64,000 bases of DNA, taken from the IMG/VR virus record IMGVR_UViG_3300023174_000046, positions 124,001 to 188,000 of that record. The stretch is one strand, 5' to 3'. The position numbers were made by a program, and so were the translations under genes. The notes under the pieces are model-generated. The model made no database searches and had not been told where the DNA came from. It saw only the letters and a list, made by a program, of their open reading frames with translations. Below are positions 19,451-51,935 of the stretch, piece by piece (position 1 is the stretch's first letter; every line of letters begins with the position of its first letter).

Positions 19451-19464
19451 CATTAAATATTTTT

Positions 19465-23399: not shown

Positions 23400-23401
23400 G
23401 C

Positions 23402-24893: not shown

Positions 24894-24895
24894 TT

Positions 24896-26453: not shown

Positions 26454-27241
26454 AGATTTGTTTTTCATACAGTGTTGATGAGAACTACTATTCATACGTT
26501 AAAAATAGTATTAATTCGCTTACCAAAAATGCTCCAAACGTATATGCAAATATTGATCTTGTTGATTTCTACCAAACATATATTAATTTTGTCGACAGCA
26601 ATAAGATAAAATTCAATTACATTTTTCCTAAAGTACCGGCTAACAAAATTACTATTAAAAATAAAGGTTGTGAAGCATTAACAGAGAGAATAGTCAGTCT
26701 CACAGGTGCATATGCAAATCTACGCAAAGTTTACAACATTTATAGCCTACTATTAACTAATGAGTATGATTACGTGGTTAATATGGATGCAGATAATTTA
26801 ATTCTCAAGAATGTAGAGGACTATATCTCCAGATTACCACAAGGTTTCGATATTCACATCAAATATAATGAAGGTAAACTAGAAGGTGATGAGCTAGTAA
26901 GAAGAAAGGATAATTTTAAACATTTTAACGCAGTAGGGGTTGAATTAATCGACAAGCATTTCCGGGAAGGATGCATGGTAGTTAGCAATACTGAGAACTC
27001 ACGTAAATTTTTTAAGCTAGTGGCAGAGAATATCTTATCAAAAATTGTATGGTACGGTGATTCATACTGGATAACATATGCTTATTCTTTAATGAAAGAC
27101 GAAATTAAAATAAATCGTCTCCCTGAGGATTTTGTAATTTATGATCTCAATGAAACCAACATTGATACTGCATATGTTTGTAGTGGTTATGGCATGAATA
27201 AACATAGTAATTTATATAAACAGTTAATAGTTGATGAATAA
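26450..27241 (+). CDS. GT-A glycosyltransferase (start probably MKICF at 26450)
   Basis: SVDENY, NMDADNLI DxD motif, WYGD; ATGA overlap with the upstream stop. Confidence 0.55.
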   Translation: MKICFSYSVDENYYSYVKNSINSLTKNAPNVYANIDLVDFYQTYINFVDSNKIKFNYIFPKVPANKITIKNKGCEALTERIVSLTGAYANLRKVYNIYSLLLTNEYDYVVNMDADNLILKNVEDYISRLPQGFDIHIKYNEGKLEGDELVRRKDNFKHFNAVGVELIDKHFREGCMVVSNTENSRKFFKLVAENILSKIVWYGDSYWITYAYSLMKDEIKINRLPEDFVIYDLNETNIDTAYVCSGYGMNKHSNLYKQLIVDE

Positions 27242-27992
27242 ATTTTTAAATTTATACAATAGCTATATTAAGCTATCTAACACACATCAGTTTGAAAAAA
27301 ATAATACTAAGTTTATAGGTATGTTCGGTAAAACATATGAAAACGGCAAAATAATCACAACAAAATTATACTTTAATATAGAAAAGTCTATTAACTGTGA
27401 CTCCTTTCCGTATCAAAATAAAATTAACCTATATAAAAAATACGAACCCTTTGTAGATTATACACGCACTTTCAGCAACTGTATTGCAGTTAAAAAAGAT
27501 TTAACAAAAAATAATTTTACCGAATACTTTCATCTTAAATTTAACAACCAGTTCAAGTTTGAAGAGCTTGATACTTTTCATGGTATTAATTTAAATGATT
27601 ACAAAAAAGGTATATCTGTAGAATTCAATAAAACAAAAGAAGACATAAAACGATATTATTATATAAGTGACATTTTCGATATACAGACAATTTTCAATCA
27701 ATTTAATATTAAAGAGAATGCATCTGCATTAAAATATATCGAGTTTACATACAATCCAACTAAGAGCATTTTTATATATAACGATACAGAAAAGCTTTTA
27801 ACGGGCATAACACATAACTGCCCTGGTGATATTGTACTTGATGTGCATGCCATGACTGACAGCTACGGGCTTAAGCCATGTTTATTCGGAAAATACTATG
27901 GTACACCAAAATATACAGTATATTGGGATCTAAATTTTAACAATTTTAATTTGGGTAGCGACTTATTTAAATATATTACTGAGCAAAGTTGA
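27231..27992 (+). CDS. Hypothetical protein, possibly an ABBA/PatF-like prenyltransferase fold
   Basis: Recurring K-x-Y strands (TKLYF, KRYYY, YTVYW) and GISVEF; weak resemblance only. Confidence 0.25.
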   Translation: MMNKFLNLYNSYIKLSNTHQFEKNNTKFIGMFGKTYENGKIITTKLYFNIEKSINCDSFPYQNKINLYKKYEPFVDYTRTFSNCIAVKKDLTKNNFTEYFHLKFNNQFKFEELDTFHGINLNDYKKGISVEFNKTKEDIKRYYYISDIFDIQTIFNQFNIKENASALKYIEFTYNPTKSIFIYNDTEKLLTGITHNCPGDIVLDVHAMTDSYGLKPCLFGKYYGTPKYTVYWDLNFNNFNLGSDLFKYITEQS

Positions 27993-28016
27993 TATTATAA
28001 GTAGTTATTGTAGTAT
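27989..28016 (+). promoter_or_regulatory. sigma70-like promoter opening the amidinotransferase operon
   Basis: TTGATA-N16-TAGTAT, 6 nt before the ATG. Confidence 0.6.
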
Positions 28017-28022
28017 AAACTT

Positions 28023-29120
28023 ATGGAGTGTCCTGTCAATAGTCATAATGAATGGGATGTTTTGGAGGAAGTTATTGTGGGTAATGGATTTCCAGAAAAA
28101 ATACCTATTGATGATATGTCTTTCCGTTTATTTTTTCACGATAATATATACGGCAAACCTACAACTTACTTTTCCGAACGCTGGGGCATGTGTTCTAAGA
28201 TAATAGATGAGCATAATGAAGATTTAGAAAATTTTGTTAGTCTACTGCAACAGAATAACGTAACAGTAAGGAGACCGAAGAAACCTACCAGTATAAAGAA
28301 GATAAAAACCTTGGGCTGGAATAGTATAAATTACCCCGCACTCAATGTAAGAGACCTAACCATGATAGTTGGTAGTACGATTATTGAAACACCTGTTTCT
28401 GCGCGCTGGAGACAGTTTGAAAATGATTATATGAAACATTTATTTTTAGAATACTTTAATAAAGGTGCAAGATGGTTGAATGCACCGCGTCCTATCGCTA
28501 CAGACAACTCATACGATTTGAATGAAGTGTATAAAACAGAAGGTGCAGAAGCATTTTATTTTGATATTAAAGATAAGTTTAGTCACGAATTAGATTGTGG
28601 ATATGAAATAATGTTTGACGCAGCAAACTGTCAACGTCTAGGTGATAAAATTCTTTTTAATGCACCTACTAAAAATGAGATGCTTGGAGTAAAGTGGTTA
28701 CAAGACATGTTAGGGGAAGCATATACAATCTGGCCATGCAATGTAACAGATCATCATATAGACTCAGTATTTTTACCTTTACGCCCTGGATTGGCATTAA
28801 TTACACTTGATATTGTTGATAAGTTGCCGTGTGAATTACAAAAATGGGATTTTATACGCATACCTGCAGAGCTTGATTCCGATAAAAACATAAACTACAC
28901 ACCGCTAGCATCTGAAAAAATTTATTGTAACGTACTTTCTTTAAATCCAAATAAAATTATTTGTTTGCCTGAGTATTACTCTTTACTATCATCAAAGCTC
29001 AAGCCTTACAACATTGAAGTTATACCTTCACAAATACGTTATAGTCGGTTATTTGGTGGTGGTCATCACTGTCTCTCGTTAGATATACGAAGACAAAGTA
29101 AGTTAGAAAGCTATTTTTAA
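28023..29120 (+). CDS. L-arginine-dependent amidinotransferase (glycine/inosamine-phosphate amidinotransferase family)
   Basis: PVNSHNEWDVLEEVIVG, RD, FDAAN, HIDS..PLRPG, GGGHHC.SLD.RR with the catalytic Asp/His/Cys. Confidence 0.92.
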   Translation: MECPVNSHNEWDVLEEVIVGNGFPEKIPIDDMSFRLFFHDNIYGKPTTYFSERWGMCSKIIDEHNEDLENFVSLLQQNNVTVRRPKKPTSIKKIKTLGWNSINYPALNVRDLTMIVGSTIIETPVSARWRQFENDYMKHLFLEYFNKGARWLNAPRPIATDNSYDLNEVYKTEGAEAFYFDIKDKFSHELDCGYEIMFDAANCQRLGDKILFNAPTKNEMLGVKWLQDMLGEAYTIWPCNVTDHHIDSVFLPLRPGLALITLDIVDKLPCELQKWDFIRIPAELDSDKNINYTPLASEKIYCNVLSLNPNKIICLPEYYSLLSSKLKPYNIEVIPSQIRYSRLFGGGHHCLSLDIRRQSKLESYF

Positions 29121-29884
29121 TGAAATTATTAGTTTTAATATTTTCTTGCAAGAAAAATATAGACCGTTGCCTGGCAATACAACAGTCATGGCTGCAAGAT
29201 CTCAAGCAAAACCATATTGAGTATTTTTTTGTTTCTGCAGATGATCTAGAATTACAAGAACCGTCAATTAAACTAGAAAATTTTACTGAATGTTACGAAC
29301 AATTACCGCTTAAAACATTTCTTACTCTCAAACAAATTTACAATTATAAGTTTACACATCTTGTTAAAACAGATGATGATGTTTTCTTGAATATTAAAAA
29401 GTTAATTGCAACACTTCCGAAAAATGTTGATTATTCAGGCAAATTTAACCTCAAAGGTGTTGATGCGTCCATGATACACTATTATAAATGTAGTGGAGAA
29501 TTTAGAACACCAAAAAAGAAAGCAAGCCACGACTACGCAGAAGGGGGCATGTACATACTCAGTAAGAAAGCTGTTAAATATATTGTAAGTTGTGATCAGG
29601 AAACTTTCATTAATTCACCTAAAACTTATAAAGGTGAAGATGTTGCAGTTGGTGAACTACTTAATAATGAAAAATTTACTAAATTAGATCTTACAGATAG
29701 CTTATCTGACAAACTTAATATGGATATCACAAGAAATGGTGTCTCGTATCACCCGGTGCATAAATCGTTGATGCACAAATTATATAAAGCTAAGACAACG
29801 AACGACAGAATAGATATATTAGTTGCAAATACAGCAAAGAATGACTATAATAAACGGGATATATTTATTAGAAAATATGAGTAA
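29120..29884 (+). CDS. GT31 galactosyltransferase/Fringe-like glycosyltransferase
   Basis: YEQLPLKT, KTDDDVF, YAEGGMYILS, EDVAVG. Confidence 0.85.
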   Translation: MKLLVLIFSCKKNIDRCLAIQQSWLQDLKQNHIEYFFVSADDLELQEPSIKLENFTECYEQLPLKTFLTLKQIYNYKFTHLVKTDDDVFLNIKKLIATLPKNVDYSGKFNLKGVDASMIHYYKCSGEFRTPKKKASHDYAEGGMYILSKKAVKYIVSCDQETFINSPKTYKGEDVAVGELLNNEKFTKLDLTDSLSDKLNMDITRNGVSYHPVHKSLMHKLYKAKTTNDRIDILVANTAKNDYNKRDIFIRKYE

Positions 29885-30527
29885 TAATGTTTTAGTGCTA
29901 GCACCTCACGGTGATGACGAAGTTTTAGGCTGTGGTGGCAGCATTGCCAAGCATATTGAATTGGGTGATCAAGTTACAGTTGCTTTTATTAAAGCTGCGT
30001 ACGATGAGAGATCCACAGTACAGCTTCAAAACACGATAAGTGCGCAAAAAGTATTAGATTATGAGAGAATGATTATTATGAATTTAGATGAGAATACTAT
30101 TCATAACAAACTTGAGTTTATAAAAGAGCTTGAAGTAATCGTGAATACGGTAAAACCTGATACAATTTATTCAACTTTTTATGGCGATTTGCATCAAGAT
30201 CATCGCGCATTATTTGAAGCGCTCAATACAGCAGCGCGTGTATGGGCAGACCATCTTGTTAAAAAAATTCTACTTTGTGAGACAATATCTTCAACTGATC
30301 AAGGTATTATTCGTAATATTCATCCGTTTGTACCCAATTATTATGTAACATTAAGTGAACACCATATAGACAAAAAGATGAATGCATTATCATGCTATGA
30401 AAGGGAAATTAAAAAAGAATGTCACCCAAGATCAATAGAGCATGTTTTGAATGTAGCAAAATCTCGAGGTCGTGAGATAAGAAACTCTTATGCAGAAGCA
30501 TTTATGCTTATGAGATTTATAGATTAA
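29877..30527 (+). CDS. PIG-L/LmbE-family N-acetylglucosaminyl deacetylase (start probably MSNNV)
   Basis: APHGDDEVLGCGG, DLHQDH, AEAF. Confidence 0.9.
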   Translation: MSNNVLVLAPHGDDEVLGCGGSIAKHIELGDQVTVAFIKAAYDERSTVQLQNTISAQKVLDYERMIIMNLDENTIHNKLEFIKELEVIVNTVKPDTIYSTFYGDLHQDHRALFEALNTAARVWADHLVKKILLCETISSTDQGIIRNIHPFVPNYYVTLSEHHIDKKMNALSCYEREIKKECHPRSIEHVLNVAKSRGREIRNSYAEAFMLMRFID

Positions 30528-30528
30528 C

Positions 30529-31308
30529 ATGAATACTTGCAGACATAATAATAAAAATTATAATCTCAACGTAGCTAGTTATACAGAAGAAGAAAATTTT
30601 TTAAAAGAATTTATAGCTAAAGGTTACGTTTTCTTAGAGAATGTTGTTAACCTCAATTACAACTATAAAGAGAGATCTGAATATTCTAGAATAAAGCAAA
30701 TGGATGTTATTGATAATTTCTTTCCTGATAACCCCGAATATTTTCAAATTTATAATAGTTTTAAAAAATCAAAAATATTTGATATACTTTCCAATAATTT
30801 AACAAGCTTAAGACTGTATAATTTTATGTGTTTTCGTCTATACAAAGGGAACGAATGCTCATCATTGCACCGTGATGATGATTTTGCTATAACGTATACC
30901 CTCAAAACACCATTTGTAATTTGCTGGATGCCTTTGACAGACGTCTCTCTTGCGGCTGGTCCTCTTGCAATTGCAGAAAGAACCAAGACTGTGTATACAC
31001 AGCATGATATCAAAGAGGGTGAAAAATATATTCAAAAATATTTAAAAAGTAACAACGTTATGGAGAATATTGATGGTATACGCAATGCCATGCTAGAGGA
31101 AGAAGATTATAAAATTTCTGTACATAGAGATTTCGATACATTAATCTCACGTGATCTCAAAAAAGGTGATGTTGTTGTAATGAATCACGATATTGTTCAT
31201 GGATCATTAGATAATAATAATTTGATTCGGTCTTCTATTGATTTGAGATTGTTTTATAACTGTGACACAAATAATAATCTGCTCAAAAGAGTATCTCTAG
31301 ATACATGA
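30529..31308 (+). CDS. PhyH-family 2OG-Fe(II) dioxygenase
   Basis: LHRD, WMPLTDV..GPL, GDVVV..HGS..N..RSSIDLR. Confidence 0.85.
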   Translation: MNTCRHNNKNYNLNVASYTEEENFLKEFIAKGYVFLENVVNLNYNYKERSEYSRIKQMDVIDNFFPDNPEYFQIYNSFKKSKIFDILSNNLTSLRLYNFMCFRLYKGNECSSLHRDDDFAITYTLKTPFVICWMPLTDVSLAAGPLAIAERTKTVYTQHDIKEGEKYIQKYLKSNNVMENIDGIRNAMLEEEDYKISVHRDFDTLISRDLKKGDVVVMNHDIVHGSLDNNNLIRSSIDLRLFYNCDTNNNLLKRVSLDT

Positions 31309-32723
31309 ATAAAAGCATAGTTATTTTGGGTGGCGGTACTGCTGGTTGGATGAGCGCGCTTTTCTTTAAGAAAGCATACCCCCAATCAAAAGTTACTGTA
31401 GTTGAGTCCGAAGAGATAGGTATTATAGGCGTGGGCGAAAGCACCACACCGTATTTTATAGAAATGTTAGATTTTCTTGATATAAATGTTTTAGATATTT
31501 TAAAAGCAAGTGATATCGCTTTTAAAACAGGTGTAAAATTTGATGGATGGGGTAAAAGTATTTTCTACCACCCTTTTAATCTGAACGATGAACACTATAA
31601 TCATGATACTGCTCTTATTCAATACTATTTGAAAAATAAAGATACAAATGTGTTTAAAACATTAAACCCGTTAGTAACAATTACTGAACAAGGTAAGATT
31701 CAAAAAATTAAAAAAAACCTTCCACATAACGATTTTGCGGTTCATATTGATGCTTGCAAAACAAGCATTGCTTTAAAAAGTATTGCTCTCTCACGAGGCA
31801 TTCAGCTTGTACAGGGTGTAGTTGGTAGTGTAGAGGTAAAAGATAATAACGTTGCTTCTTTAATCTTAAATAGTGGGCATAGAGTTTGTGGTGATTTCTT
31901 TGTAGATTGTTCAGGATTTAATAGGGTTCTTGCAAATAAGTTCAATATTAAATTTTTAAAATTTAACGATTTATTGACAAATACAGCTATACCTTGCCCT
32001 ATTAAGAAGACTTTTTTTGAACCATATACAACCGCAAAAACCTTGAATTATGGCTGGACATGGAAGATACCTACACACTCTAGAACAGGTACCGGTTATG
32101 TTTTTTCAAGAGATTACACTGATATAGATAGTGCAAAAAAAGAATTTTATACATATTTGAAAACTGTTACAGATGAAGAAATTAACCTAAATAAAATTAT
32201 CTTTTTTGAAACTGGGACTCTTGAAAAAATTCATTTTAATAATGTATTAGCTGTTGGGTTAGCGTCACATTTTCTTGAACCACTAGAAGGCACATCTCTC
32301 GCTATATCTGCGATTATATTATTTGAGTTTATCAAACAAAAAGAAGGCTTTAATAGTAAAATACTACAAAAAATTTTACAGATAAAAGACTTTATTGTAT
32401 TACATTATTTAACTAAAAAAACACAGAGTAATTTTTGGTTGGACGCAAGCAAAAAAGCAAAAGAAAATAATTTAATTCAAAAACTCCTGTCTAGCAAAAC
32501 ATTAAATTTTGATTTATTTAAAGACAATGATTATTATTTTAGCTTTTTAAATCATCTCAACTTTTTACAGAATCTCGATGCGGTTGATACCAACACAAGT
32601 GTATCAACAGAACGCTATAAGACTGATTTTAGCTATATTAAGCTTTTAAAGTCTAAGGCATGGCATTACAGTCATGTTAAAAACGCTGTAGATTATAAAA
32701 CATATTACGAGCAGTTTCTATGA
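31305..32723 (+). CDS. Flavin-dependent tryptophan halogenase-family protein
   Basis: GGGTAGW, IGVGEST, DCSGF, WTWKIP (WxWxIP), FLEPLE. Confidence 0.9.
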   Translation: MNKSIVILGGGTAGWMSALFFKKAYPQSKVTVVESEEIGIIGVGESTTPYFIEMLDFLDINVLDILKASDIAFKTGVKFDGWGKSIFYHPFNLNDEHYNHDTALIQYYLKNKDTNVFKTLNPLVTITEQGKIQKIKKNLPHNDFAVHIDACKTSIALKSIALSRGIQLVQGVVGSVEVKDNNVASLILNSGHRVCGDFFVDCSGFNRVLANKFNIKFLKFNDLLTNTAIPCPIKKTFFEPYTTAKTLNYGWTWKIPTHSRTGTGYVFSRDYTDIDSAKKEFYTYLKTVTDEEINLNKIIFFETGTLEKIHFNNVLAVGLASHFLEPLEGTSLAISAIILFEFIKQKEGFNSKILQKILQIKDFIVLHYLTKKTQSNFWLDASKKAKENNLIQKLLSSKTLNFDLFKDNDYYFSFLNHLNFLQNLDAVDTNTSVSTERYKTDFSYIKLLKSKAWHYSHVKNAVDYKTYYEQFL

Positions 32724-33397
32724 AGATATTAGAAGAAATAGACCGCAAATATAGTTTTGATAAACTTAAAAAAGTTATTGACGAGTTTGGTCTCTGCCCT
32801 AACTGGCGAGCAATTTTGGATAACAATAAGTCTATTAATTTAGAGTATAAAGTATTACTTTTTTACAAAAAAATCTTTCTTAAATATAAAATTGATAAAA
32901 CTAAAAATATTTTAGATGTAGGGTCAGGGCTCTGCCACAATTACATGATCAGCAATATAATTGGAGCAAAATGTACCTGTCTTGAAAAAATACCATGCTC
33001 CACAGGCACAGATGAAAGCAATCTGTACGCATTATTTCATAAAATTTTAAATATAGAGTCAACACTTTATTATAACATTAATTCACCCAACGTTTCTCTC
33101 CCAGGAAAATTTGATTATATACTATTACTCAACCAGACTTTCGATGAAAAACAAAACGCTAATGGTGATATAACTGTGTGGAGCATTGAGGATTGGGAAA
33201 CGTTTATTAAAAACCTGAACATCAACTTAAACCCTGGTGGCAAGATACTTATCAATTGGACGTTGCAACAGTTAAATGATGTGCATGAAAATGACCCGCT
33301 TTATACTAGCAAAAATGGAAAGATTGTTAAGTATCAGCACAATAAAAACTTTAAATTTTTTAAAAAACACCCAGAATTTAATGTGAGGTTTATATAA
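32720..33397 (+). CDS. Class I SAM-dependent methyltransferase
   Basis: ILDVGSG, FDYI, LNPGG. Confidence 0.8.
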   Translation: MKILEEIDRKYSFDKLKKVIDEFGLCPNWRAILDNNKSINLEYKVLLFYKKIFLKYKIDKTKNILDVGSGLCHNYMISNIIGAKCTCLEKIPCSTGTDESNLYALFHKILNIESTLYYNINSPNVSLPGKFDYILLLNQTFDEKQNANGDITVWSIEDWETFIKNLNINLNPGGKILINWTLQQLNDVHENDPLYTSKNGKIVKYQHNKNFKFFKKHPEFNVRFI

Positions 33398-33400
33398 TAC

Positions 33401-33634
33401 ATGGATATTGAATTGTTTGGATGGTTTTCTACATTCTTTCTTTGGGGTGCTGCTCTACCCAAGCAAAGGCATGTATTGCATCTCTGTACAGCCATAGCAG
33501 CTTTGTCTCGTGCGGTCTATATTATAACCTTGTACCTGGGGCCTACAGGTAATCTCGCTAGGCCATTGATAATAAATTGGATAGCGCTATTTGTTATTCA
33601 CCTATATCAGTACTTTGTATATAAAAATAAATAA
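33401..33634 (+). CDS. Small membrane protein with about 3 TM segments
   Basis: Hydrophobic segments; ELFGW start; within the operon. Confidence 0.55.
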   Translation: MDIELFGWFSTFFLWGAALPKQRHVLHLCTAIAALSRAVYIITLYLGPTGNLARPLIINWIALFVIHLYQYFVYKNK

Positions 33635-33637
33635 TAA

Positions 33638-33826
33638 ATGGTAAGTTTGAGTGCAATTAACGATTTTTTTGATCTGTCTAAACCATGCCCCTCAGAAATA
33701 AAAAGATGTCGACAACTTAGAAACGATTACCGACTTGAACTTCGAAATATGAAGCAATGCACAAGCTGTGCAACACGAGTAGTAAAAAACGTTTATATTA
33801 ATAAAATAAATCAATGCTCGAATTAA
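33638..33826 (+). CDS. Small Cys-rich protein, paralogue 1
   Basis: FFD..PCP..I..C..LR.DY..EL...C..C pattern shared with the next ORF. Confidence 0.7.
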   Translation: MVSLSAINDFFDLSKPCPSEIKRCRQLRNDYRLELRNMKQCTSCATRVVKNVYINKINQCSN

Positions 33827-34017
33827 CTAAAATAGAAAGGTTTTTTGATATGAATCAGCCTTGCCCGTCAGATATACCTGATTGTGAACAACATAGAAAA
33901 GACTATTTAAATAAATTAGAAGAATTGAAAAAACAAAACGGTTGCAGTCCTTGCAAGATGCGAGGGATCAGAAACCATTATCTTCAAATTATTACAGGAG
34001 CGTATGGAGCTAAGTAA
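33814..34017 (+). CDS. Small Cys-rich protein, paralogue 2
   Basis: FFDMNQPCPSDIPDCEQHRKDY...GCSPC. Confidence 0.7.
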   Translation: MLELTKIERFFDMNQPCPSDIPDCEQHRKDYLNKLEELKKQNGCSPCKMRGIRNHYLQIITGAYGAK

Positions 34018-34333
34018 TTTTATAATAGGGTTTTTATCGACAAGTAGTTTACTGCTACTTTGGTTTTATTCTTCTTTAAAGATTACTTTAGCAGAAATCT
34101 TTTTTAATGAGAAAATTACAAATAATGATCAATTTGAAGACTTAATTATGATTCGTCTAAAAAATGAAAAACTATCACATTTATCAAGTTGTTATATTTG
34201 CATGAGTTTTTGGACATCATTTCTTGTAGGATGTCTTTTAACGTTTTTGGGTAGCCCCAACTATACCCCTGTCATTACATTCTTGACTTACCCCTGCTTG
34301 TGTTATATAATGAAGAAATATGTCTTTGATTGA
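34004..34333 (+). CDS. DUF1360-like membrane protein
   Basis: TM segments with SCYICMSFW (CxxCxSxW). Confidence 0.6.
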   Translation: MELSNFIIGFLSTSSLLLLWFYSSLKITLAEIFFNEKITNNDQFEDLIMIRLKNEKLSHLSSCYICMSFWTSFLVGCLLTFLGSPNYTPVITFLTYPCLCYIMKKYVFD

Positions 34334-35096
34334 TAGCAAAGTGTGTATCCTGGGGGATGGGTTCGTTGGCCAATCTCTAAAGAAAGCACTACAAAAATGT
34401 CATGATGTGGTTCTTCTTGGACCTCAAGAAGTGCCTGTACAGAAGGCTTTTGATGTCTGTTTTATTTGTGTGCCTACAAATAACACAAACAGTGTTACTG
34501 ATTTATCAAATATAGAAGACGCTTTTCACAAGATAAAGAGCAATCTATATATTATTAAGTCTACTGTGCCAGTTGGTACTTGTAAAGAATTGACTGATCG
34601 CTTTAAAGTAGATATAGTTTATTGTCCAGAATTTTTAAGTGAATCAACATACCACAATCCAACTAATTGTGCAGGCAATTTACTTGAATGGCCTTTTTTC
34701 GTTCTCGGTGGAAACAACGGGCCTGTTGATAATGCATATAATTTTTTATTAGAAATTTTTGGTCCCTGCAAGTCTTACTCTTTTGCTACTTTTGAAACTG
34801 CAGAGCTTTTTAAGTACACAATAAATTTATTCTGGACGTTTAAATTATCTTTTTTTAATAGCATATTTGATGTCTGTGCTGATTTTAATGTAGATTACAA
34901 AAAATTAAGAGAATTGGTACTTTTAGATAAACGTATACACCCGCTTCATACCGCTATTTTTAAAAATAAGAGAGGTTTTAGGGGAAAATGCTTGCCCAAA
35001 GATCTTGAATCCTTTGTATCACAAATAAAAAACAAACAAAGCAAAGATTTATTTGCTATGATTCAGCAATATAATAACCTTTTTATTAAAAAATAA
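34320..35096 (+). CDS. UDP-glucose/GDP-mannose dehydrogenase-family protein (short form)
   Basis: GDGFVG, FICVPT, IKSTVPVG, PEFL, AELFKY..N, GFRGKCLPKD. Confidence 0.9.
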   Translation: MSLIDSKVCILGDGFVGQSLKKALQKCHDVVLLGPQEVPVQKAFDVCFICVPTNNTNSVTDLSNIEDAFHKIKSNLYIIKSTVPVGTCKELTDRFKVDIVYCPEFLSESTYHNPTNCAGNLLEWPFFVLGGNNGPVDNAYNFLLEIFGPCKSYSFATFETAELFKYTINLFWTFKLSFFNSIFDVCADFNVDYKKLRELVLLDKRIHPLHTAIFKNKRGFRGKCLPKDLESFVSQIKNKQSKDLFAMIQQYNNLFIKK

Positions 35097-35903: not shown

Positions 35904-36716
35904 GTGTTTAAGTATATAGTAGGTTTTTCATCGTTTCTCATAGCATCTATTGCCGCATATTTTTCAATAAAAGGCATATCTTTACTGTTCGCAGGTAGTT
36001 TTTGGCCTGTTGTTTTGATGGCCGGTTCTCTTGAAATTGGCAAGCTTGTTGCAACCAGTAGCTTATATCGGTATTACCATGAATTGAATGGTTTTATTAA
36101 AACATACCTATTTACTGCTATAGCTGTTTTAATGATTATTACTAGCTTGGGCATATTTGGGTTTTTATCCGATGCATTTTATAGAAGTAAAATCAAGTCA
36201 GAAACCATGTCAGCTAAAGTTACTTTTGCTGAAGAAAAGAAAATTACATTGCAGCAGAAATTTGACTACAATAAAGAAAGAGTCAAAACATTATCAAATA
36301 TTAGAACATCGCAAGAGGAGAGACTCTCTTCAACAACCAAACAAAATACAAGTACGCAAAAAAGCGGTCTTTTTGGCACAGACCAATCAATAGATGCAAA
36401 TGCTCTTAAGAGTAAAACTAAAATTCTCGAAAACGTAAGTGAAGAAATAAAAACTGCAAACTTACAGATTGATGAGCTTAATAAAGAAAACGGTGGCATA
36501 ATGAATGAGCTAGAATCACTCAATTCGCAACTATTAGCGCTTAAACAGAATGAAAGCAAGGAATCAGATATTGGCACTTTCAAGTTTATTGCAAAATCAT
36601 TTAATCTTGAGTTGGATGTAGCTGTAAAATACTTCATCATATCACTAGTGTTTGTATTTGACCCATTAGCAGTAATCTTGTTGATAGTTTTTAACTCTCT
36701 AATAAAAAAAAAGTAA
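35904..36716 (+). CDS. Membrane protein (3 N-terminal TMs, coiled coil, C-terminal TM) ending in a slippery A9 run
   Basis: AAYFSI.G, SLEIGKLV, TSLGIFGFLS, VFVFDPLAV; ends ATA AAA AAA AAG TAA. Confidence 0.85.
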   Translation: MFKYIVGFSSFLIASIAAYFSIKGISLLFAGSFWPVVLMAGSLEIGKLVATSSLYRYYHELNGFIKTYLFTAIAVLMIITSLGIFGFLSDAFYRSKIKSETMSAKVTFAEEKKITLQQKFDYNKERVKTLSNIRTSQEERLSSTTKQNTSTQKSGLFGTDQSIDANALKSKTKILENVSEEIKTANLQIDELNKENGGIMNELESLNSQLLALKQNESKESDIGTFKFIAKSFNLELDVAVKYFIISLVFVFDPLAVILLIVFNSLIKKK

Positions 36717-36742
36717 TATTTGACGAAGAAATAATTGTACTG

Positions 36743-37129
36743 GTGCCTTCACCAACACCGACTGTCACTCCGACGCCCACAGTAACGCCAACTTTAACTG
36801 TAACTGCTACGCCTGCTCCCACTATGACTTCAACCCCTACGGCCACATATACTCCACCACCCACACAAACGCCAACCGCTACCAGTTTTTCTACACCCCT
36901 TCAAGTAGATGAAATGAAAACTACATCAAATAGCAGACTAGAAGGCACCATATATTGGAGTAAAATGAAATGGGATCTGCCTACATTGACGCCTACACCA
37001 CAGGCACAAGAAAGTGAAAAAATAGAACAAAAAGAAATAAATAGTGAAAATTTTATTCGTATAACCGACAACACCCCATCAGTATTTGATAGTAAAAACA
37101 AGCTGTCATATTTTAAAAAGATTGATTAA
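36743..37129 (+). CDS. Pro/Thr mucin-like ORF, probably the -1 frameshift extension of the upstream membrane protein
   Basis: -1 frame open from 36710 (AAA GTA ATA TTT GAC GAA...) through the PT repeats. Confidence 0.6.
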   Translation: MPSPTPTVTPTPTVTPTLTVTATPAPTMTSTPTATYTPPPTQTPTATSFSTPLQVDEMKTTSNSRLEGTIYWSKMKWDLPTLTPTPQAQESEKIEQKEINSENFIRITDNTPSVFDSKNKLSYFKKID

Positions 37130-37137
37130 ATATTATT

Positions 37138-37368
37138 ATGATTGGAAGCGATGCATTTACAAATGGCATTGCCATTTGCGAAGAGTTTTCTCGCCATACA
37201 TATGGCGACAAAGAGAATCAATCTATGCTTGTCAATGTTTCACATGATTGGGTTGATAGCTTAATAAACAGAATGTCAAGAATTGGTTTCAAATTAATTA
37301 CAAAGATAGAGATGGACATGACAACCACGGTCGTCTTTAGTTTGGTCAAGCTTAAAAAATCTGCTTGA
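37138..37368 (+). CDS. Hypothetical late protein
   Basis: TAAATA 5 nt upstream of the ATG. Confidence 0.55.
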   Translation: MIGSDAFTNGIAICEEFSRHTYGDKENQSMLVNVSHDWVDSLINRMSRIGFKLITKIEMDMTTTVVFSLVKLKKSA

Positions 37369-37397
37369 ATTATAGAATCTTATATTATCATTAGTAG

Positions 37398-38096
37398 GTG
37401 ATAGAATTTAATAAAGCACTTCATGCCTATACAAATGTCCATACAGGCGCAAATTACTTCTCTGTAACAACTGTAATTAATTCTTTTAAAGAGCCTTTTG
37501 ATGTTGATAAATTTTCCAAGCTTGTAGCTGCAAAAGAAGGTGTAACACAAGATGAGATCAAGAAGAGATGGAATACTGTAAAAACAACTGCGTGTGACTT
37601 TGGCACTGATTCACATTCAAAGATTGAAGAGCATATAAAATCTGGTGGTGAAAAATTTAAGGATGATGAAATGGTTATTAAGTTTCTGGAGATATCGGAT
37701 CTGAATATTGATAAAGTTAAGAGTGAAACACTTGTACATAATAACGAATACAGAATTGCTGGTACAGCAGATTTTATTGTTGATCAGGGCAAAACGTTTG
37801 ATGTGTATGATCTCAAGACCAATAAGAATTTCAGACAATCCTCAAAATATAACAAAACTTTACTGGCGCCTCTGACTCATTTTAGTGATTGTGAATACAA
37901 TGCATACTCACTTCAAATTTCTACCTATGCTTATCTCTACAGTACCATGACAGGCAAGAACGTTAATAGCTTACGTTTATTTTGGTATGATAAACAGAAA
38001 AACGTGTTTTCTCGTTACGATACACCTTATCTGTATACTGACGTGAAAAACATGTTAGAAGCATTTAAAGCCAAAGGTTTTACATTAAAGAAATAA
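37398..38096 (+). CDS. Cas4-like/PD-(D/E)XK exonuclease
   Basis: SVTTVI, GT..H..IE, E...IAGTAD, DLKT, YSLQISTY. Confidence 0.85.
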   Translation: MIEFNKALHAYTNVHTGANYFSVTTVINSFKEPFDVDKFSKLVAAKEGVTQDEIKKRWNTVKTTACDFGTDSHSKIEEHIKSGGEKFKDDEMVIKFLEISDLNIDKVKSETLVHNNEYRIAGTADFIVDQGKTFDVYDLKTNKNFRQSSKYNKTLLAPLTHFSDCEYNAYSLQISTYAYLYSTMTGKNVNSLRLFWYDKQKNVFSRYDTPYLYTDVKNMLEAFKAKGFTLKK

Positions 38097-38300: not shown

Positions 38301-40076
38301 ATGGCAACAGAAGGCTCAGGTGGATTCGGAAGACAACTATATAAGTTTATTAGCAATAAACTGCCTTATACTTCTTATAATATTCTCGATAAATTTGATG
38401 AGTTGAACCCAAAGTTTAAATTGTTCCACGATCAAGGAACATCCAGGCAGGAAGCTTTGCAAAGACAGAGCATTTCTTCTTCTACAAGTTACGGTGATGA
38501 TCAAGTTGCGAATGTGATGCGCGAATCGCAATTCTATCAATACATGTACGCAAACGTACAAACTGATAAACCTAAGCGCATGATGGATTACAGAATCATG
38601 GCAGCATTTTCAGAAGTTGCAGATGCATTGGATGAGATTTGTGATGAGTGTGTTAATAAGAATGATAAAGGTGAAATTGTTAAACTTACTTTTAATGTTT
38701 CAGAAGATTTTGAAGCAACAGTAAAGGAAAGTCTTTCACGTGAATTTGACCGCTACATCAATTACTTTAACCTTGAAGCTAATGGTTGGGAATATTTTAG
38801 AAGAATGCTTGTTGAAGCTGAGTTATATTTTGAGCATGTTATTCATAAAAGATTTCCACAAGAAGGTGTTCTGGGTGTTGTATCTGTTCCAAGTGAATTA
38901 ATTGATCCTATCTTTTCTAATGTACAGAACATGCTTGTAAAGGGCTTCTTGCTTAGAAAGCCAATCATGGATCCACAAAATCCTCTTAAGATTAAAGACT
39001 ACAAGATGATCCCGATGGACAAGAATCAGATAACATATATCAATTCTGGTATATGGAACGAAAATAAGACGCTCCGTCTTCCATTCATTGAGAATGCTCG
39101 TCGTGCTTATCGTCAGTTATCTTTGATTGAAGATTCAATCGTAATTTATAGATTAGTTAGAGCACCAGAACGTTTGATCTTTAATGTGGATGTGGGTAAC
39201 ATGTCGCCACCAAAAGCTGAGGCTTATCTGCGCAAGCTCATGAGCAATTATTGGTCCAAGAGAACATTTGATATTGACCAGAGTGCAACTGTGCAGAAGT
39301 TTAACCCACAATCAATGTTGGATAGCTTCTGGTTTGCCAAGCGTGCTGGCAGCGATGGTACCAATGTTACCTCGTTACCTGGTGGTCAGAATCTCGGTGA
39401 GTTGACTGACTTGATGTACTTTGTTAAGAAACTCTATAAAGCTCTTAAAGTACCAACTACAAGATTGAATCCAGAAGATCAATACCAAGGTGGTGAAAAT
39501 ATTCTTCGTGAAGAGTTAAAGTTTGCAAAATTTGTTGTACGGTTGCAACAGAGATTTGCTTTAGGTTTGAAGAACGGTTTTATTACACATCTAAAGCTTA
39601 AAGAGTTGTGGGACAAGCATAAACTCAAAGAACATCACCTCGATCTCACTTTTAACCCACCATCTAACTTTTATGAACTCAGAGAACAACAGAAACTCGA
39701 ACTCAAAGCTAAGACATTTAATGATTTCTCTCAAAACGATAGTGTCTCAAAGACTTACGCACAAAAGCGTTATCTTGGATGGACTGAGAAAGAAATTATG
39801 GCTAACCGTGAATTCTTACGTAAAGATAAAGAATTCTCATGGGAACTTGCACAAATTGAAGCAGCAGGTCCAGCATGGCAAAAAGCTATTGCAGCAGGTG
39901 GCGAGCCAGCGGCTGCAGAAGGTGGTGCTGAAGCCGGTGGTGGTGCGCCTCCCGCGTTTGGACCAGGTACTGCAGCTGTCAGTGGCGGGGCAGAAGCAGG
40001 CGCGGCTCCTGAGGCTCCAGCAGCTGGTGCAGAAGCAGGTGCGGCCGCAGCAACTCCTGAAGCACCTGCAGCATAA
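38301..40076 (+). CDS. gp20: T4-like portal vertex protein gp20
   Basis: YR.MA..EV.DALDEI, QLSLIEDSIVIYRLVRAPERLIFNVDVGNMSPPKAEAYL, LPGGQNL, KKLYKALKVP, REELKF. Confidence 0.97.
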   Translation: MATEGSGGFGRQLYKFISNKLPYTSYNILDKFDELNPKFKLFHDQGTSRQEALQRQSISSSTSYGDDQVANVMRESQFYQYMYANVQTDKPKRMMDYRIMAAFSEVADALDEICDECVNKNDKGEIVKLTFNVSEDFEATVKESLSREFDRYINYFNLEANGWEYFRRMLVEAELYFEHVIHKRFPQEGVLGVVSVPSELIDPIFSNVQNMLVKGFLLRKPIMDPQNPLKIKDYKMIPMDKNQITYINSGIWNENKTLRLPFIENARRAYRQLSLIEDSIVIYRLVRAPERLIFNVDVGNMSPPKAEAYLRKLMSNYWSKRTFDIDQSATVQKFNPQSMLDSFWFAKRAGSDGTNVTSLPGGQNLGELTDLMYFVKKLYKALKVPTTRLNPEDQYQGGENILREELKFAKFVVRLQQRFALGLKNGFITHLKLKELWDKHKLKEHHLDLTFNPPSNFYELREQQKLELKAKTFNDFSQNDSVSKTYAQKRYLGWTEKEIMANREFLRKDKEFSWELAQIEAAGPAWQKAIAAGGEPAAAEGGAEAGGGAPPAFGPGTAAVSGGAEAGAAPEAPAAGAEAGAAAATPEAPAA

Positions 40077-40084
40077 ATAATTAG

Positions 40085-42332: not shown

Positions 42333-43946
42333 ATGATCCTCGAGGCTATAGATGGCAGTATATTAATTGCGCTTGATGATGCAATCTTACTAGATGTAGG
42401 AAGTACACCGCCCGCTCCAGACACAAATTATACAGAACTCCCACAAGGTGAACCTCTTACACTTTCACTTCAAAGTTACAACTTGTTAAGAACCAACGGT
42501 GTGTATTTGTGTGGAGCTGATTATTCATCAGTAACTGATTATTTGAGTACAGGGTTTTTCGATGGTTACGTAAATGTTGAAGATTTTAAAAACACAAAAA
42601 GTTTATCTGGGTATTTTCCTTCGTTCTCTGCATATAAAATTTCAACAAATGCATACAGAGTAGCAAATAATAATATTATTGATGTAAAGTTACCGCCAGT
42701 AGCAATTTCATACGATACAGATGCATCGTTTAATATTATTGTAAAAAATACAGGTGGGTATAGTAAGAGCAGGTTATATTACCCAGCTAGCATCGAACCT
42801 TCACCAACGCCCACACTAACTGTCACACCAACTGTCACACCAACTGTCACACCTACAGTAACGCCATCTGCAACACTCCCACCCCCTTTACCAAAGAAAT
42901 TGCTTAGCACAGGAAACAATTTATATGGTCAATTGGGATTGGGCAACAGTGGTGCTAGTACAAGCAGAAACACTCTCACTCCATTGACTGGCAATTGGTT
43001 ACAGGTCACATGTGGGTATTGGCACACCATGGCGCTGTCTGCTGGTGCTACAAAATGGTTTAGCGCAGGAAGCAATTTCAGTGGTCAATTAGGATTAGGA
43101 TTGGAATTTGGTAACACCAGAAGCACATTCACTCCATTGACTGGCAATTGGAGTCAGATGGCATGTGGTCACAGCTACACCATGGCACTGTCTGCTGGTA
43201 CTACTCGGTTGTTTGGCACAGGACTCAATTCCTTTGGTGGTTTTGGATTGGGTGATACAGTTCGGAGAAACACCTTCACTGCACTGACTGGCAACTGGTC
43301 CCAGATGGCATGTGGTGTGGGTCACACCATAGCATTAAGTGCAGATACAGACAGGTGGTTTATCACAGGAGACAATTTCAGCGGTCAATTAGGCTTAGGT
43401 GACAGTGGCAGCGCTACTGATAGACTCACTTTTATAGCATTGACTGGCAATTGGTCACAAGTCAGATGTGGTGGGTATCACACCATGGCACTGTCTGCTG
43501 GTACTACTCGGTTGTTTGGCACAGGAAACAATAGCAGCGGTCAATTGGGATTGAGCGACACAACTAATAGAAACACTTTCACTGCATTGACTGGCAATTG
43601 GTCACAAGTCATATGTGGAAGCGAACTTACCATAGCATTAAGTGCAGATACAGACAGGTGGTTTATCACCGGGCGGAATGACAATGGTCAATTGGGATTG
43701 GGTGATACAGTTCAGAGAAACACCTTCACTGCATTGACTGGCAATTGGTCACAGTTTGCATGTGGTAGGTTTCACACCATGGCACTGTCTGCTGGTACCG
43801 ATGCATGGTTTGGCACAGGAAACAATAGCAGCGGTCAATTGGGATTGGGTGATACAGTTCAGAGAAACACCTTCACTGCATTGACTGGCAATTGGTTACA
43901 ATTCATATGTGGAAGCGAACACACCATGGCATTGAGCGCTACATAA
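42333..43946 (+). CDS. Ig-like domain, PT stalk and 7-bladed RCC1/BLIP-II beta-propeller
   Basis: Seven G.N..GQLGLG....R.TF..LTGNW.Q..CG..HT.ALS repeats after a TPTV linker. Confidence 0.9.
   Translation: MILEAIDGSILIALDDAILLDVGSTPPAPDTNYTELPQGEPLTLSLQSYNLLRTNGVYLCGADYSSVTDYLSTGFFDGYVNVEDFKNTKSLSGYFPSFSAYKISTNAYRVANNNIIDVKLPPVAISYDTDASFNIIVKNTGGYSKSRLYYPASIEPSPTPTLTVTPTVTPTVTPTVTPSATLPPPLPKKLLSTGNNLYGQLGLGNSGASTSRNTLTPLTGNWLQVTCGYWHTMALSAGATKWFSAGSNFSGQLGLGLEFGNTRSTFTPLTGNWSQMACGHSYTMALSAGTTRLFGTGLNSFGGFGLGDTVRRNTFTALTGNWSQMACGVGHTIALSADTDRWFITGDNFSGQLGLGDSGSATDRLTFIALTGNWSQVRCGGYHTMALSAGTTRLFGTGNNSSGQLGLSDTTNRNTFTALTGNWSQVICGSELTIALSADTDRWFITGRNDNGQLGLGDTVQRNTFTALTGNWSQFACGRFHTMALSAGTDAWFGTGNNSSGQLGLGDTVQRNTFTALTGNWLQFICGSEHTMALSAT
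42900..43943 (+). repeat. Seven near-identical ~150-bp RCC1 repeat units
   Basis: Recurring DNA such as ggtcaattgggattgggtgatacagttcagagaaacaccttcactgcattgactggcaattgg. Confidence 0.9.
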
Positions 43947-51843: not shown

Positions 51844-51935
51844 GCGCGGGTGGTGAAACGGCGAAACACATCTGGCTTAAGATCAGATACGGATTAATGA
51901 TCACACTGTGGGTTCAAATCCCACCCCGCGTACCA
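51844..51935 (+). tRNA. trnL: tRNA-Leu(UAA) with encoded CCA
   Basis: Acceptor GCGCGGG/CCCGCGT-A-CCA; anticodon arm TCTGG-CTTAAGA-TCAGA; long variable arm; T arm GTGGG-TTCAAAT-CCCAC. Confidence 0.95.

What the first reader, a model, noticed from the sequence alone, without database searches (positions are those of the whole stretch)
36702..37129. -1 slippery site A_AAA_AAG fuses a membrane protein to a mucin-like tail
Gene 35904 ends ATA AAA AAA AAG TAA. It has an A9 run at 36704-36712 and the canonical dnaX/IS-type heptamer A AAA AAG at 36707-36713, directly before the stop. The -1 frame is open (K V I F D E E I I V L V P S P T P T V T...) to 37129, and the downstream ORF has no promoter or SD of its own. 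This predicts two isoforms, with and without a glycosylatable PT extension, by ribosomal frameshifting, transcriptional slippage or A-tract phase variation.
Basis: partly seen in the sequence, partly recalled or inferred. Interest (0 to 1): 0.72.

Follow-up and report, generated by a model that had tools for sequence, protein, structure and literature searches.

The report
Poly-A recoding extends phage membrane protein
A run of nine A's at the end of a phage membrane-protein gene, kept in every relative examined, most likely lets some transcripts or ribosomes slip by one base so that the protein gains a proline/threonine-rich tail with a small conserved end piece. This is a new, well-conserved example of a known trick, not a new kind of mechanism.

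Summary
Gene 35904..36716 (270 aa; four membrane helices plus a long helical hairpin) ends ATA AAA AAA AAG TAA. The A9 run lies at 36704-36712, and the -1 frame is open from 36695 to 37129.

The site is real and conserved, not an assembly error.
- In 17 of 18 distinct relatives (57-97% protein identity, several assemblers) an A9 or A10 run sits at the same place. The 0-frame stop follows 1-25 nt later, and the -1 frame runs on for 94-183 codons.
- Those codons encode a PT-rich linker and a conserved C-terminal motif. Many lineages have no start codon there.
- The tail is under purifying selection (dN/dS 0.18-0.46).
- A second, distant clade of the same family (26 sequence contexts) always carries A10 followed by a -1 PT-rich tail.
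- Other clades, including cultured phages, carry their tails in frame.

Run length (9-10) is the conserved feature, not the A_AAA_AAG heptamer. No conserved hairpin or Shine-Dalgarno-like stimulator exists. I therefore favour programmed transcriptional slippage, with ribosomal -1 slippage as a possible contributor. The result would be 270-aa and 408-aa isoforms.

Phase variation, separate initiation and a decayed gene are unlikely. Glycosylation was not tested, and the protein's function is unknown.

The parts
35904..36716 (+). Gene A, 270 aa (GTG start). It is a phage membrane protein with helices 2-28, 33-56 and 63-146, a return helix 165-220, and a last membrane helix 237-268. It ends in an invariant Lys-Lys-Lys. 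This is the short isoform.
   Evidence: ORF list. More than 4900 homologues, all viral. AlphaFold2 model with mean pLDDT 71. The best AlphaFold DB fold matches are DUF4407 proteins. No Pfam or PHROG family reaches significance.
36704..36712 (+). A9 run, the proposed slippage site. It is made of the wobble A of the Ile codon ATA, AAA, AAA and the first two bases of AAG.
   Evidence: Sequence. The run is A9 or A10 in all 18 clade lineages. Among the 16 aligned lineages, the wobble of the preceding codon is A in 15 and the first two Lys codons are AAA in 16, while neighbouring third positions vary freely.
36707..36713 (+). Heptamer A_AAA_AAG, a candidate ribosomal -1 slippery site inside the run.
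   Evidence: Sequence. Present in 13 of 18 lineages. The other five have A_AAA_AAA: four A10-T lineages and L179.
36714..36716 (+). 0-frame stop codon TAA of the short isoform.
   Evidence: Its position is not conserved: it lies 1-25 nt after the run in relatives.
36692..36694 (+). TAA in the -1 frame, 9 nt before the run. It closes the -1 frame upstream, so the tail can only be entered at the run.
   Evidence: In most lineages the -1 ORF opens 9 nt before the run.
36713..37129 (+). The -1 frame extension: 138 codons plus the TAA stop. Joined to gene A it gives a predicted 408-aa long isoform.
   Evidence: Open in the -1 frame in 17 of 18 lineages. dN/dS is 0.18-0.46 in that frame. Six lineages have no ATG, GTG or TTG anywhere in it. 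Gene callers leave this roughly 400-nt stretch empty in relatives.
36746..36898 (+). Pro/Thr-rich low-complexity linker (tail residues 12-62).
   Evidence: Translation. The composition is conserved but the sequence is not. Predicted disordered.
36944..36982 (+). Motif G-x-I-x-W-S-x-x-x-W-x-L-P (tail residues 78-90), conserved in part of the clade.
   Evidence: Alignments A2 and A4.
37049..37126 (+). Conserved C-terminal motif, roughly F-I-K-I-I-D-N-T-P ... L-S-Y-F-K-K. It is predicted to form two short beta strands.
   Evidence: I, D, T and L are invariant across 13-17 sequences. Strands fall at tail-fragment residues 45-49 and 63-67, with pLDDT about 70-78. A profile search of 1.84 billion proteins found only short fragments of the same ORFs.
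37138..37368 (+). Next gene (76 aa, unknown function). It always follows the tail ORF in this clade and marks the end of the recoded unit.

Best explanation
This is a programmed recoding site.

Proposed mechanism:
- Standard decoding of gene A stops at 36714-36716 and gives a 270-aa membrane protein.
- On the A9 run (36704-36712), a fraction of transcripts most likely gains one extra A by RNA-polymerase slippage. Ribosomal -1 slippage on the same A_AAA_AAG may add to this.
- Translation then continues in the -1 frame to 37129. It adds a disordered linker of about 110 residues, whose first half is Pro/Thr-rich, and a small conserved two-strand end motif, giving a 408-aa isoform.
- The long form has the architecture that other clades of the family encode in frame: membrane core, flexible tail, short conserved C-terminal motif. 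So the site probably sets a fixed ratio of anchor-only to anchor-plus-tether protein.

Shown here: the conserved run, the conserved -1 relationship, selection on the tail, and the lack of start codons.
Inferred: that slippage happens, at which level, its efficiency, and what the tail binds.

The confidence of 0.5 is for transcription as the main route. My confidence that the site is programmed recoding of either kind is about 0.85-0.9.
For: Conservation in this clade:
- 18 lineages (57-97% identity, from JGI, ENA and Logan assemblies) all carry A9 or A10 at the Lys-Lys-Lys that follows the last membrane helix. In 17 of them the tail is in the -1 frame and open from the run.
- Synonymous sites are saturated (dS 0.5 to over 2). 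Yet, in the 16 aligned lineages, the wobble before the run is A in 15 and the first two Lys codons are AAA in 16. In L179, loss of the leading A is matched by AAG becoming AAA, so the run stays at nine.
- The chance of this is about 1e-4 to 1e-7 for 5-8 independent lineages.

The tail is a real coding region:
- Its dN/dS is 0.18-0.46.
- Six lineages have no ATG, GTG or TTG in the whole -1 ORF.

Second clade:
- All 26 contexts read CCG AAA AAA AAA A(T/C)T GG(A/G) TAG.
- The -1 peptide is conserved from the first codon after the run, followed by a long (TP)n linker and a conserved C-terminal domain.
- 24 of 26 have no start codon before the run.

Family context:
- The genome otherwise avoids such runs.
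- Other clades and cultured phages have in-frame tails.

Favouring transcription as the main route:
- Run length is fixed at 9-10, the length of the RNA:DNA hybrid. Runs of 9 A/T slip efficiently in bacteria (PMC5009743).
- AAG is dispensable.
- There is no conserved downstream structure (fold z-scores about 0) and no upstream Shine-Dalgarno-like element.
- In E. coli reporters, 9 A's gave 40% shifted product and 7 A's gave 10% (PMC3711429).
Against: - No RNA or protein data exist for this site. Only assembled contigs of public runs could be laid, and the one metatranscriptome found holds only a relative and does not span the run.
- A_AAA_AAG is the most shift-prone heptamer for E. coli ribosomes. 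It is present in 13 of 18 lineages, in some directly before a stop. That fits ribosomal frameshifting equally well.
- The host and its tRNA-Lys set are unknown, and the phage encodes no tRNA-Lys.
- Nine A's is near the lower limit for efficient polymerase slippage.
- One lineage (L181, a single Logan contig) has the tail in the +1 frame. This could not be verified.
Confidence: 0.5

Rival explanations
1. Purely ribosomal -1 programmed frameshifting of the dnaX/IS type. Ribosomes decoding A_AAA_AAG (36707-36713) slip back one base, helped by the adjacent stop codon. The mRNA is a faithful copy of the DNA.
For: - A canonical heptamer lies in the correct phase, directly before a stop.
- It is kept in 13 of 18 lineages.
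- The product would be identical to that of a +1 A transcript.
Against: - Five lineages of this clade and all 26 contexts of the second clade have A_AAA_AAA instead.
- The A two positions before the heptamer, which the heptamer does not need, is conserved or compensated.
- There is no conserved hairpin or pseudoknot and no conserved Shine-Dalgarno-like element.
- The distance to the stop varies from 1 to 25 nt.
Confidence: 0.33
2. DNA-level phase variation. Replication slippage changes the tract between A9 (off) and A10 (on), so subpopulations of phage carry fused or unfused genes.
For: Homopolymer tracts of this length are also slippery for DNA polymerases (PMC3711429). Raw reads could not be inspected.
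Against: - Every consensus in 18 + 26 lineages or contexts and more than 60 contigs is in an out-of-frame state. All but L181 need the same -1 shift, and no fused gene was seen.
- No protein of about 400 aa carrying the tail motif exists among 1.84 billion representatives.
- Two independent assemblies agree on A9.
- A9 changes to A10 only by substitution (AAG to AAA followed by T), which preserves the frame.
Confidence: 0.04
3. Two separate genes. The PT-rich ORF is translated on its own, from the GTG at 36743, from a non-canonical start, or by re-initiation after the stop.
For: The window has a GTG 30 nt after the run. A few relatives have GTG or TTG codons somewhere in the ORF, and gene callers occasionally call fragments.
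Against: - The GTG is absent in the 97% relative.
- Six lineages have no ATG, GTG or TTG in the whole ORF.
- No Shine-Dalgarno sequence is present.
- In the second clade the -1 peptide is conserved from the very first codon after the run.
Confidence: 0.04
4. Artefact or decay: an assembly error in a homopolymer, or a dead frameshifted gene whose tail is no longer made.
For: Homopolymers are error-prone, and all the data are metagenomic.
Against: - The same state appears in different samples, studies and assemblers.
- A10 lineages still need a -1 shift.
- The tail is under purifying selection and stays open despite saturated synonymous divergence.
Confidence: 0.02

Closest known systems
Citrobacter rodentium tssM1 (and Yersinia pseudotuberculosis tssM): transcriptional frameshifting at a poly-A run (PMC4256274)
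   Same: An inner-membrane protein gene stops just after a run of A's. Extra A's in the mRNA restore the frame and add a C-terminal domain. Two length variants are made, and their ratio matters.
   Different: The tssM1 run is A11 in a bacterial secretion gene, and slippage was shown experimentally. Here the run is A9-A10 in a phage gene of unknown function, is conserved across two deep clades, and nothing has been measured.
Thermus thermophilus dnaX (run of nine) and two-ORF dnaX genes with A10 in Chlorobi (PMC5009743, PMC3711429)
   Same: A run of 9-10 is used as a programmed transcriptional slippage site that gives two products in a set ratio. In the two-ORF dnaX genes the long product needs the shift, as it does here.
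   Different: The protein is different. In T. thermophilus the long product comes from the 0 frame.
E. coli dnaX -1 ribosomal frameshifting at A_AAA_AAG
   Same: The same heptamer in the same phase.
   Different: dnaX has an upstream Shine-Dalgarno-like element and a downstream hairpin. None is conserved here. In dnaX the shift truncates the protein. Here it extends it.
Shigella flexneri spa13, mxiE and related genes: transcriptional slippage (cited in PMC5009743, PMC3711429)
   Same: A or T runs of 9-10 give a C-terminally extended functional product in a fraction of molecules (25-30% for spa13).
   Different: These are bacterial type III secretion genes, not phage genes.
Phage tail assembly chaperone G/GT-type -1 frameshift (PMC5009743, PMC10885494)
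   Same: A phage gene pair in which a conserved -1 shift near the end of the first ORF makes a fixed minority of an extended protein.
   Different: That is a different gene family, with heptamers such as G_GGA_AAG and a ribosomal mechanism. The gene here is a membrane protein and not part of the tail module.
DUF4407 (PF14362) membrane proteins
   Same: The predicted fold of gene A (membrane helices plus a long helical hairpin) best matches AlphaFold DB entries named DUF4407.
   Different: The Pfam model gives no hit at E <= 0.1. DUF4407 has no known function, so the likeness explains nothing about role.

Membership tests
Programmed transcriptional slippage (realignment) | Homopolymeric A or T run of about 9 or more, the length of the RNA:DNA hybrid | tested here: met
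   A9 at 36704-36712. A9 or A10 in all 18 lineages of this clade and A10 in all 26 contexts of the second clade.
Programmed transcriptional slippage (realignment) | Run length, rather than codon phase or a heptamer, is what selection keeps | tested here: met
   The wobble A before the run is kept in 15 of 16 aligned lineages. L179 loses it but gains AAA in the third Lys codon, so the run stays at 9 in another phase. AAG is replaced by AAA in five lineages.
Programmed transcriptional slippage (realignment) | The extended product needs the commonest slippage product, one extra base, which equals the -1 frame | tested here: met
   17 of 18 lineages and 26 of 26 contexts have the tail in the -1 frame. 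L181 has it in the +1 frame and is unverified.
Programmed transcriptional slippage (realignment) | The mRNA population contains extra A's that are absent from the DNA | not testable with these tools
   Only assembled contigs of public runs could be laid. No RNA run holds this sequence across the run.
Programmed -1 ribosomal frameshifting (dnaX/IS type) | X_XXY_YYZ heptamer in the 0-frame phase with an open -1 ORF | tested here: met
   A_AAA_AAG at 36707-36713. The -1 frame is open to 37129.
Programmed -1 ribosomal frameshifting (dnaX/IS type) | Stimulators: a downstream hairpin or pseudoknot, and/or an upstream Shine-Dalgarno-like element | tested here: not met
   The 60 nt after the run fold at 0 to -12.8 kcal/mol, with z-scores from -2.1 to +1.4 and no shared structure. 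The upstream sequence is T-rich without GGAG. A GGAG occurs upstream in part of the second clade only.
Programmed -1 ribosomal frameshifting (dnaX/IS type) | A trans-frame protein is made from unedited mRNA | not testable with these tools
   This needs protein and RNA data.
Phase variation by slipped-strand mispairing | In-frame and out-of-frame tract lengths coexist among strains or within populations | tested here: not met
   No in-frame tract in more than 60 contigs. No fused protein in 1.84 billion representatives. Two assemblies are identical. Minor variants within reads could not be examined.
DUF4407 (PF14362) | A significant match to the Pfam model | tested here: not met
   No Pfam hit at E <= 0.1 other than two chance-level matches. 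There is fold similarity only.
Spanin pair (Rz/Rz1-like embedded or overlapped genes) | The second ORF has its own start, a signal peptide with a lipobox Cys, and lies in the +1 frame | tested here: not met
   The tail ORF lacks a start codon in many lineages, has no N-terminal signal or lipobox, and lies in the -1 frame.

The most novel reading that the evidence does not exclude
Programmed RNA-polymerase slippage at an A9-A10 run is a family-wide, anciently maintained feature of a 'dark' membrane-protein family of aquatic myoviruses. It is found in two well-supported clades covering at least 44 lineages or sequence contexts. It sets the ratio of an anchor-only form to an anchor-plus-PT-tether form, and the terminal motif of the tether docks an unknown partner. 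To my knowledge, and in the papers I could search, it would be the first conserved transcriptional-slippage gene of tailed phages outside the tail-chaperone paradigm.
Probability: 0.45. Interest if true: 0.65.

Novelty: new member of a known kind. Interest (0 to 1): 0.58.

Why it matters
- Annotation: gene callers leave a gap of about 400 nt after this gene in every relative, or call meaningless fragments. A conserved protein segment is therefore missing from databases. A simple rule would recover it across many uncultured phage genomes: an A9-10 run after the last membrane helix, with an open -1 frame.
- Mechanism: it adds a deeply conserved natural case in which run length, not a heptamer, is under selection. 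That makes it a good system for separating polymerase slippage from ribosome slippage.
- Phage biology: a widespread, uncharacterised phage membrane protein appears to need two isoforms in some lineages. This is a handle for finding out what the protein does.

Tried and rejected
- Assembly error: rejected. Independent assemblies and many lineages agree.
- Read-level A9/A10 polymorphism: could not be tested. All runs are held only as contigs.
- RNA evidence: the only metatranscriptomes found hold a relative, and none spans the run.
- Downstream stimulatory RNA structure and upstream Shine-Dalgarno element: none conserved.
- Own promoter or terminator: at chance level.
- Pfam and PHROG searches of gene A, both tails and the neighbours: nothing informative.
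- Profile search with the tail end against 1.84 billion proteins: found only fragments of the same ORFs. There is no fused protein and no other context.
- Complex prediction of the tail end with the two flanking small proteins: 'no answer' (score 0.02), so it is evidence neither for nor against binding.
- Verifying the one +1-frame exception (L181): no second contig found.
- Single versus double origin of the recoding site: the tree shows two well-supported recoding clades. The branches between them are weak, so one origin is not excluded.
- The other two A9 runs of the genome (genome 18866 and 91531): neither has an open alternative frame, so they are not recoding sites.
- Spanin-like reading: rejected (no lipobox, no start codon).

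Full report
**Setting.** The window is bases 124001-188000 of a 217,413-bp IMG/VR virus record assembled from a lake metagenome (35.7% G+C). It is a large tailed phage. A T4-type portal gene lies at 38301..40076 (PHROG 213; PF07230 in relatives). Tail-fibre-like genes and a block of sugar-modifying enzymes lie upstream.

**Observation.**
- Gene A (35904..36716, 270 aa) ends ATA AAA AAA AAG TAA.
- The A9 run is at 36704-36712 and the heptamer A_AAA_AAG at 36707-36713.
- The -1 frame is closed by a TAA at 36692-36694, opens at 36695 and runs to the TAA at 37127-37129.
- After the run it encodes 138 residues: a short acidic start, a Pro/Thr-rich stretch (36746-36898), and a C-terminal part with two conserved motifs.
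- An open frame of that length has a chance of about 3e-5 at this composition.

**The genome avoids such runs elsewhere.**
- It holds only three A9 runs and no T9 run, against 7-11 of each expected.
- Only 2 of 22 Lys-Lys-Lys triplets in long ORFs are written AAA-AAA-AAR, against about 10 expected (P = 4e-4).
- The two other A9 runs have no open alternative frame.

**Not an assembly artefact.** Logan's independent assembly of the source sample (depth 31) and a contig from another study (depth 11) both span 35904-37400 without a gap.

**Comparative evidence in this clade.** Gene A has more than 4900 homologues, all viral. Its closest clade (57-97% identity) always ends in ...Lys-Lys-Lys plus 0-9 unconserved residues. 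I recovered DNA for 18 distinct lineages from IMG/VR, JGI, ENA and Logan assemblies.
- All carry an A9 (14) or A10 (4) run at the Lys triplet.
- The 0-frame stop lies 1-25 nt after the run.
- In 17 of 18 the -1 frame is open from the run for 94-183 codons. It encodes a PT-rich linker and then a conserved end motif, roughly F-I-K-I-I-D-N-T-P ... L-x-Y-F-K-K.
- Six lineages have no ATG, GTG or TTG anywhere in this ORF. The window's GTG at 36743 is missing in the 97% relative.
- Gene callers leave the stretch empty.
- Read in the -1 frame, the tail has dN/dS of 0.18-0.46, against 0.03-0.15 for gene A, with dS of 0.5 to over 2.

The tail is therefore a translated, selected coding region that can only be reached from gene A.

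**What is conserved at the site.** In the 30 codons before the run, third positions vary freely. The site itself is much more constrained (16 aligned lineages).
- The wobble of the codon before the run is A in 15 of 16, although the residue changes among Ile, Leu and Val (ATA, TTA, CTA, GTA).
- The first two Lys codons are AAA in 16 of 16.
- The single lineage that lost the leading A (L179, ATT) has AAA instead of AAG as its third Lys codon. The run is still nine, in another codon phase.
- The four A10 lineages replace AAG with AAA followed by T, a substitution that preserves the frame relation.
- With this genome's codon usage, the chance of keeping nine or more A's is about 0.14-0.2 per lineage. 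That gives 1e-4 to 1e-7 for 5-8 independent lineages.

The conserved unit is thus a run of 9-10 A's, not the heptamer. No conserved secondary structure follows the run (minimum free energies 0 to -12.8 kcal/mol, z-scores around 0). No Shine-Dalgarno-like element precedes it.

**A second clade with the same device.** A distant branch of the family (32-35% identity to gene A, 361-364 aa; 37 IMG/VR loci, 26 distinct sequence contexts) shows the same design.
- It always reads CCG AAA AAA AAA A(T/C)T GG(A/G) TAG, which is an A10 run.
- The -1 frame is conserved from its very first codons (N-W-I-D-N-L-P-F-A-D...).
- A (TP)n linker of up to about 200 residues follows, then a conserved C-terminal domain of about 80 residues.
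- 24 of 26 contexts have no start codon in that frame before the run.
- In a maximum-likelihood tree both recoding clades are strongly supported (100/99 and 100/100). The window's clade groups with in-frame clades, but those joining branches are weak, so one or two origins remain possible.

**Family architecture.** The other clades carry in-frame hydrophilic tails of 40-200 residues after the last membrane helix, often ending in a short conserved motif. Examples are Pelagibacter phage Mosig (326 aa, next to a putative glucosaminidase), Flavobacterium phage immuto (381 aa) and Microcystis phage Mel-JY01 (363 aa). The frameshifted 408-aa product therefore has the family's normal layout. The peculiarity of the recoding clades is the additional tail-less isoform.

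A profile of the clade's tail end found only six short fragments of the same ORFs among 1.84 billion proteins. No fused version turned up.

**Structure and function.**
- AlphaFold2 (mean pLDDT 71) gives three N-terminal membrane helices, the third running into a long helix (63-146) that returns (165-220) as a hairpin, and a last membrane helix (237-268).
- The best fold matches are uncharacterised phage proteins and DUF4407 proteins. Pfam and PHROG give nothing.
- The tail is predicted disordered except for two short strands in the end motif (pLDDT about 70-78).
- I infer a membrane anchor carrying a flexible tether whose end binds a partner by strand addition. The partner, the side of the membrane and the biological role are unknown.
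- A complex prediction with the two flanking small proteins gave no answer.
- Whether the Thr-rich linker is glycosylated was not tested.

**Mechanism.** Both routes give the same protein.
- For polymerase slippage: the fixed run length of 9-10 equals the RNA:DNA hybrid length, and runs of nine A/T slip efficiently in bacteria (PMC5009743). AAG is dispensable. There are no stimulators. The required frame is the one produced by one extra A. In E. coli reporters, shifted product rose with run length: 7 A's 10%, 9 A's 40%, 11 A's 63% (PMC3711429).
- For the ribosome: A_AAA_AAG is the best E. coli heptamer and is present in 13 of 18 lineages, sometimes next to a stop.
- My estimates: about 0.5 that transcription is the main route, about 0.33 that it is purely ribosomal, and about 0.85-0.9 that the site is programmed recoding of either kind.
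- DNA-level phase variation is unlikely because no in-frame genotype was seen anywhere.

**An exception.** L181, a single Logan contig, has A9-G-TAA with the tail in the +1 frame. One more A would make it a standard -1 case. If the contig is right, only polymerase slippage (+2 or -1 bases) could reach the tail. I found no second copy to check it.

**Comparison and novelty.** The closest documented analogue is C. rodentium tssM1. There an A11 run before the stop of an inner-membrane protein gene gives two length variants by transcriptional frameshifting, and both are needed (PMC4256274). Also close are T. thermophilus dnaX and the two-ORF A10 dnaX genes (PMC5009743, PMC3711429). Known phage recoding is dominated by tail assembly chaperones, which use ribosomal shifts (PMC10885494). 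This is a new member of a known kind: the mechanism is familiar, while the gene family, its breadth and its depth of conservation are new.

Noticed in passing
L014-L017 and L187-L223 (e.g. L189:610-2300): A second, distant clade of the same membrane-protein family (361-364 aa) always has an A10 run 5 nt before its stop. A conserved -1 extension follows, with a very long (TP)n linker of up to about 200 residues and a conserved C-terminal domain of about 80 aa.
   Followed up: yes
L181:2001-3240 (same contig as L184): This is the only clade member whose tail ORF lies in the +1 rather than the -1 frame after an A9 run. It is either a one-base homopolymer error in a Logan contig or a lineage that depends on a +2 or -1 base slippage.
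   Followed up: partly
window 22095-35096: A block of sugar- and small-molecule-modifying genes lies in the phage: glycosyltransferase family 8 (23402-24160), a galactosyltransferase/Fringe-like gene (29120-29884), a PhyH-type dioxygenase (30529-31308), a tryptophan-halogenase-like flavoenzyme (31305-32723) and a UDP-glucose-dehydrogenase-like gene (34320-35096). Relatives also carry PIG-L deacetylase and asparagine-synthase-like genes here.
   Followed up: partly
window 18752-21399: Two tail-fibre-like genes carry the N-terminal domain of the major tropism determinant (Mtd_N). The second also has a C-terminal endosialidase-chaperone (Peptidase_S74) domain.
   Followed up: no
window 39850-40076: The portal protein ends in a tail of about 70 residues rich in Ala, Gly, Pro and Glu. 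The DNA encoding it is very G+C-rich for a 36% G+C genome. A 135-aa ORF (39673..40080) overlaps it in another frame.
   Followed up: no
window 42333-43946: A 537-aa protein with seven RCC1 repeats (a beta-propeller) lies among the structural genes downstream of the portal.
   Followed up: no
genome 18866-18874 and 91531-91539 (outside the window): These are the only other A9 runs of the genome. One lies at codons 12-15 of a gene. The other is two codons before a stop (…N-K-K-K-E-L-stop). Neither has an open alternative frame, so they do not look like recoding sites.
   Followed up: yes
window 51844-51935 and genome 25059-32095, 190587-190839: The phage encodes 16 tRNAs (Thr, Gly, Ser, Asp, Gln, Val, Glu, Asn, Pro, Tyr, Leu x2, Ala, Ile, Met, Arg) but no tRNA-Lys. 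Decoding of the Lys run therefore depends on the host's tRNA.
   Followed up: partly
L224:825-2457 (Pelagibacter phage Mosig): In this cultured phage the in-frame homologue (326 aa) directly follows a putative glucosaminidase gene. This hints at a cell-envelope or lysis-related role for the family. The same neighbourhood is not seen in the window.
   Followed up: no
L216:2592-3461: One second-clade tail has an extra Cys/Trp-rich domain of about 130 residues inserted between two PT stretches. It matches PHROG 15511 (unknown function).
   Followed up: no
L014 versus L015 (about 4200-4500): Two otherwise identical contigs differ by an indel inside the (TP)n repeat, which moves the tail into another frame in L014. 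It is probably an assembly problem in the repeat.
   Followed up: no
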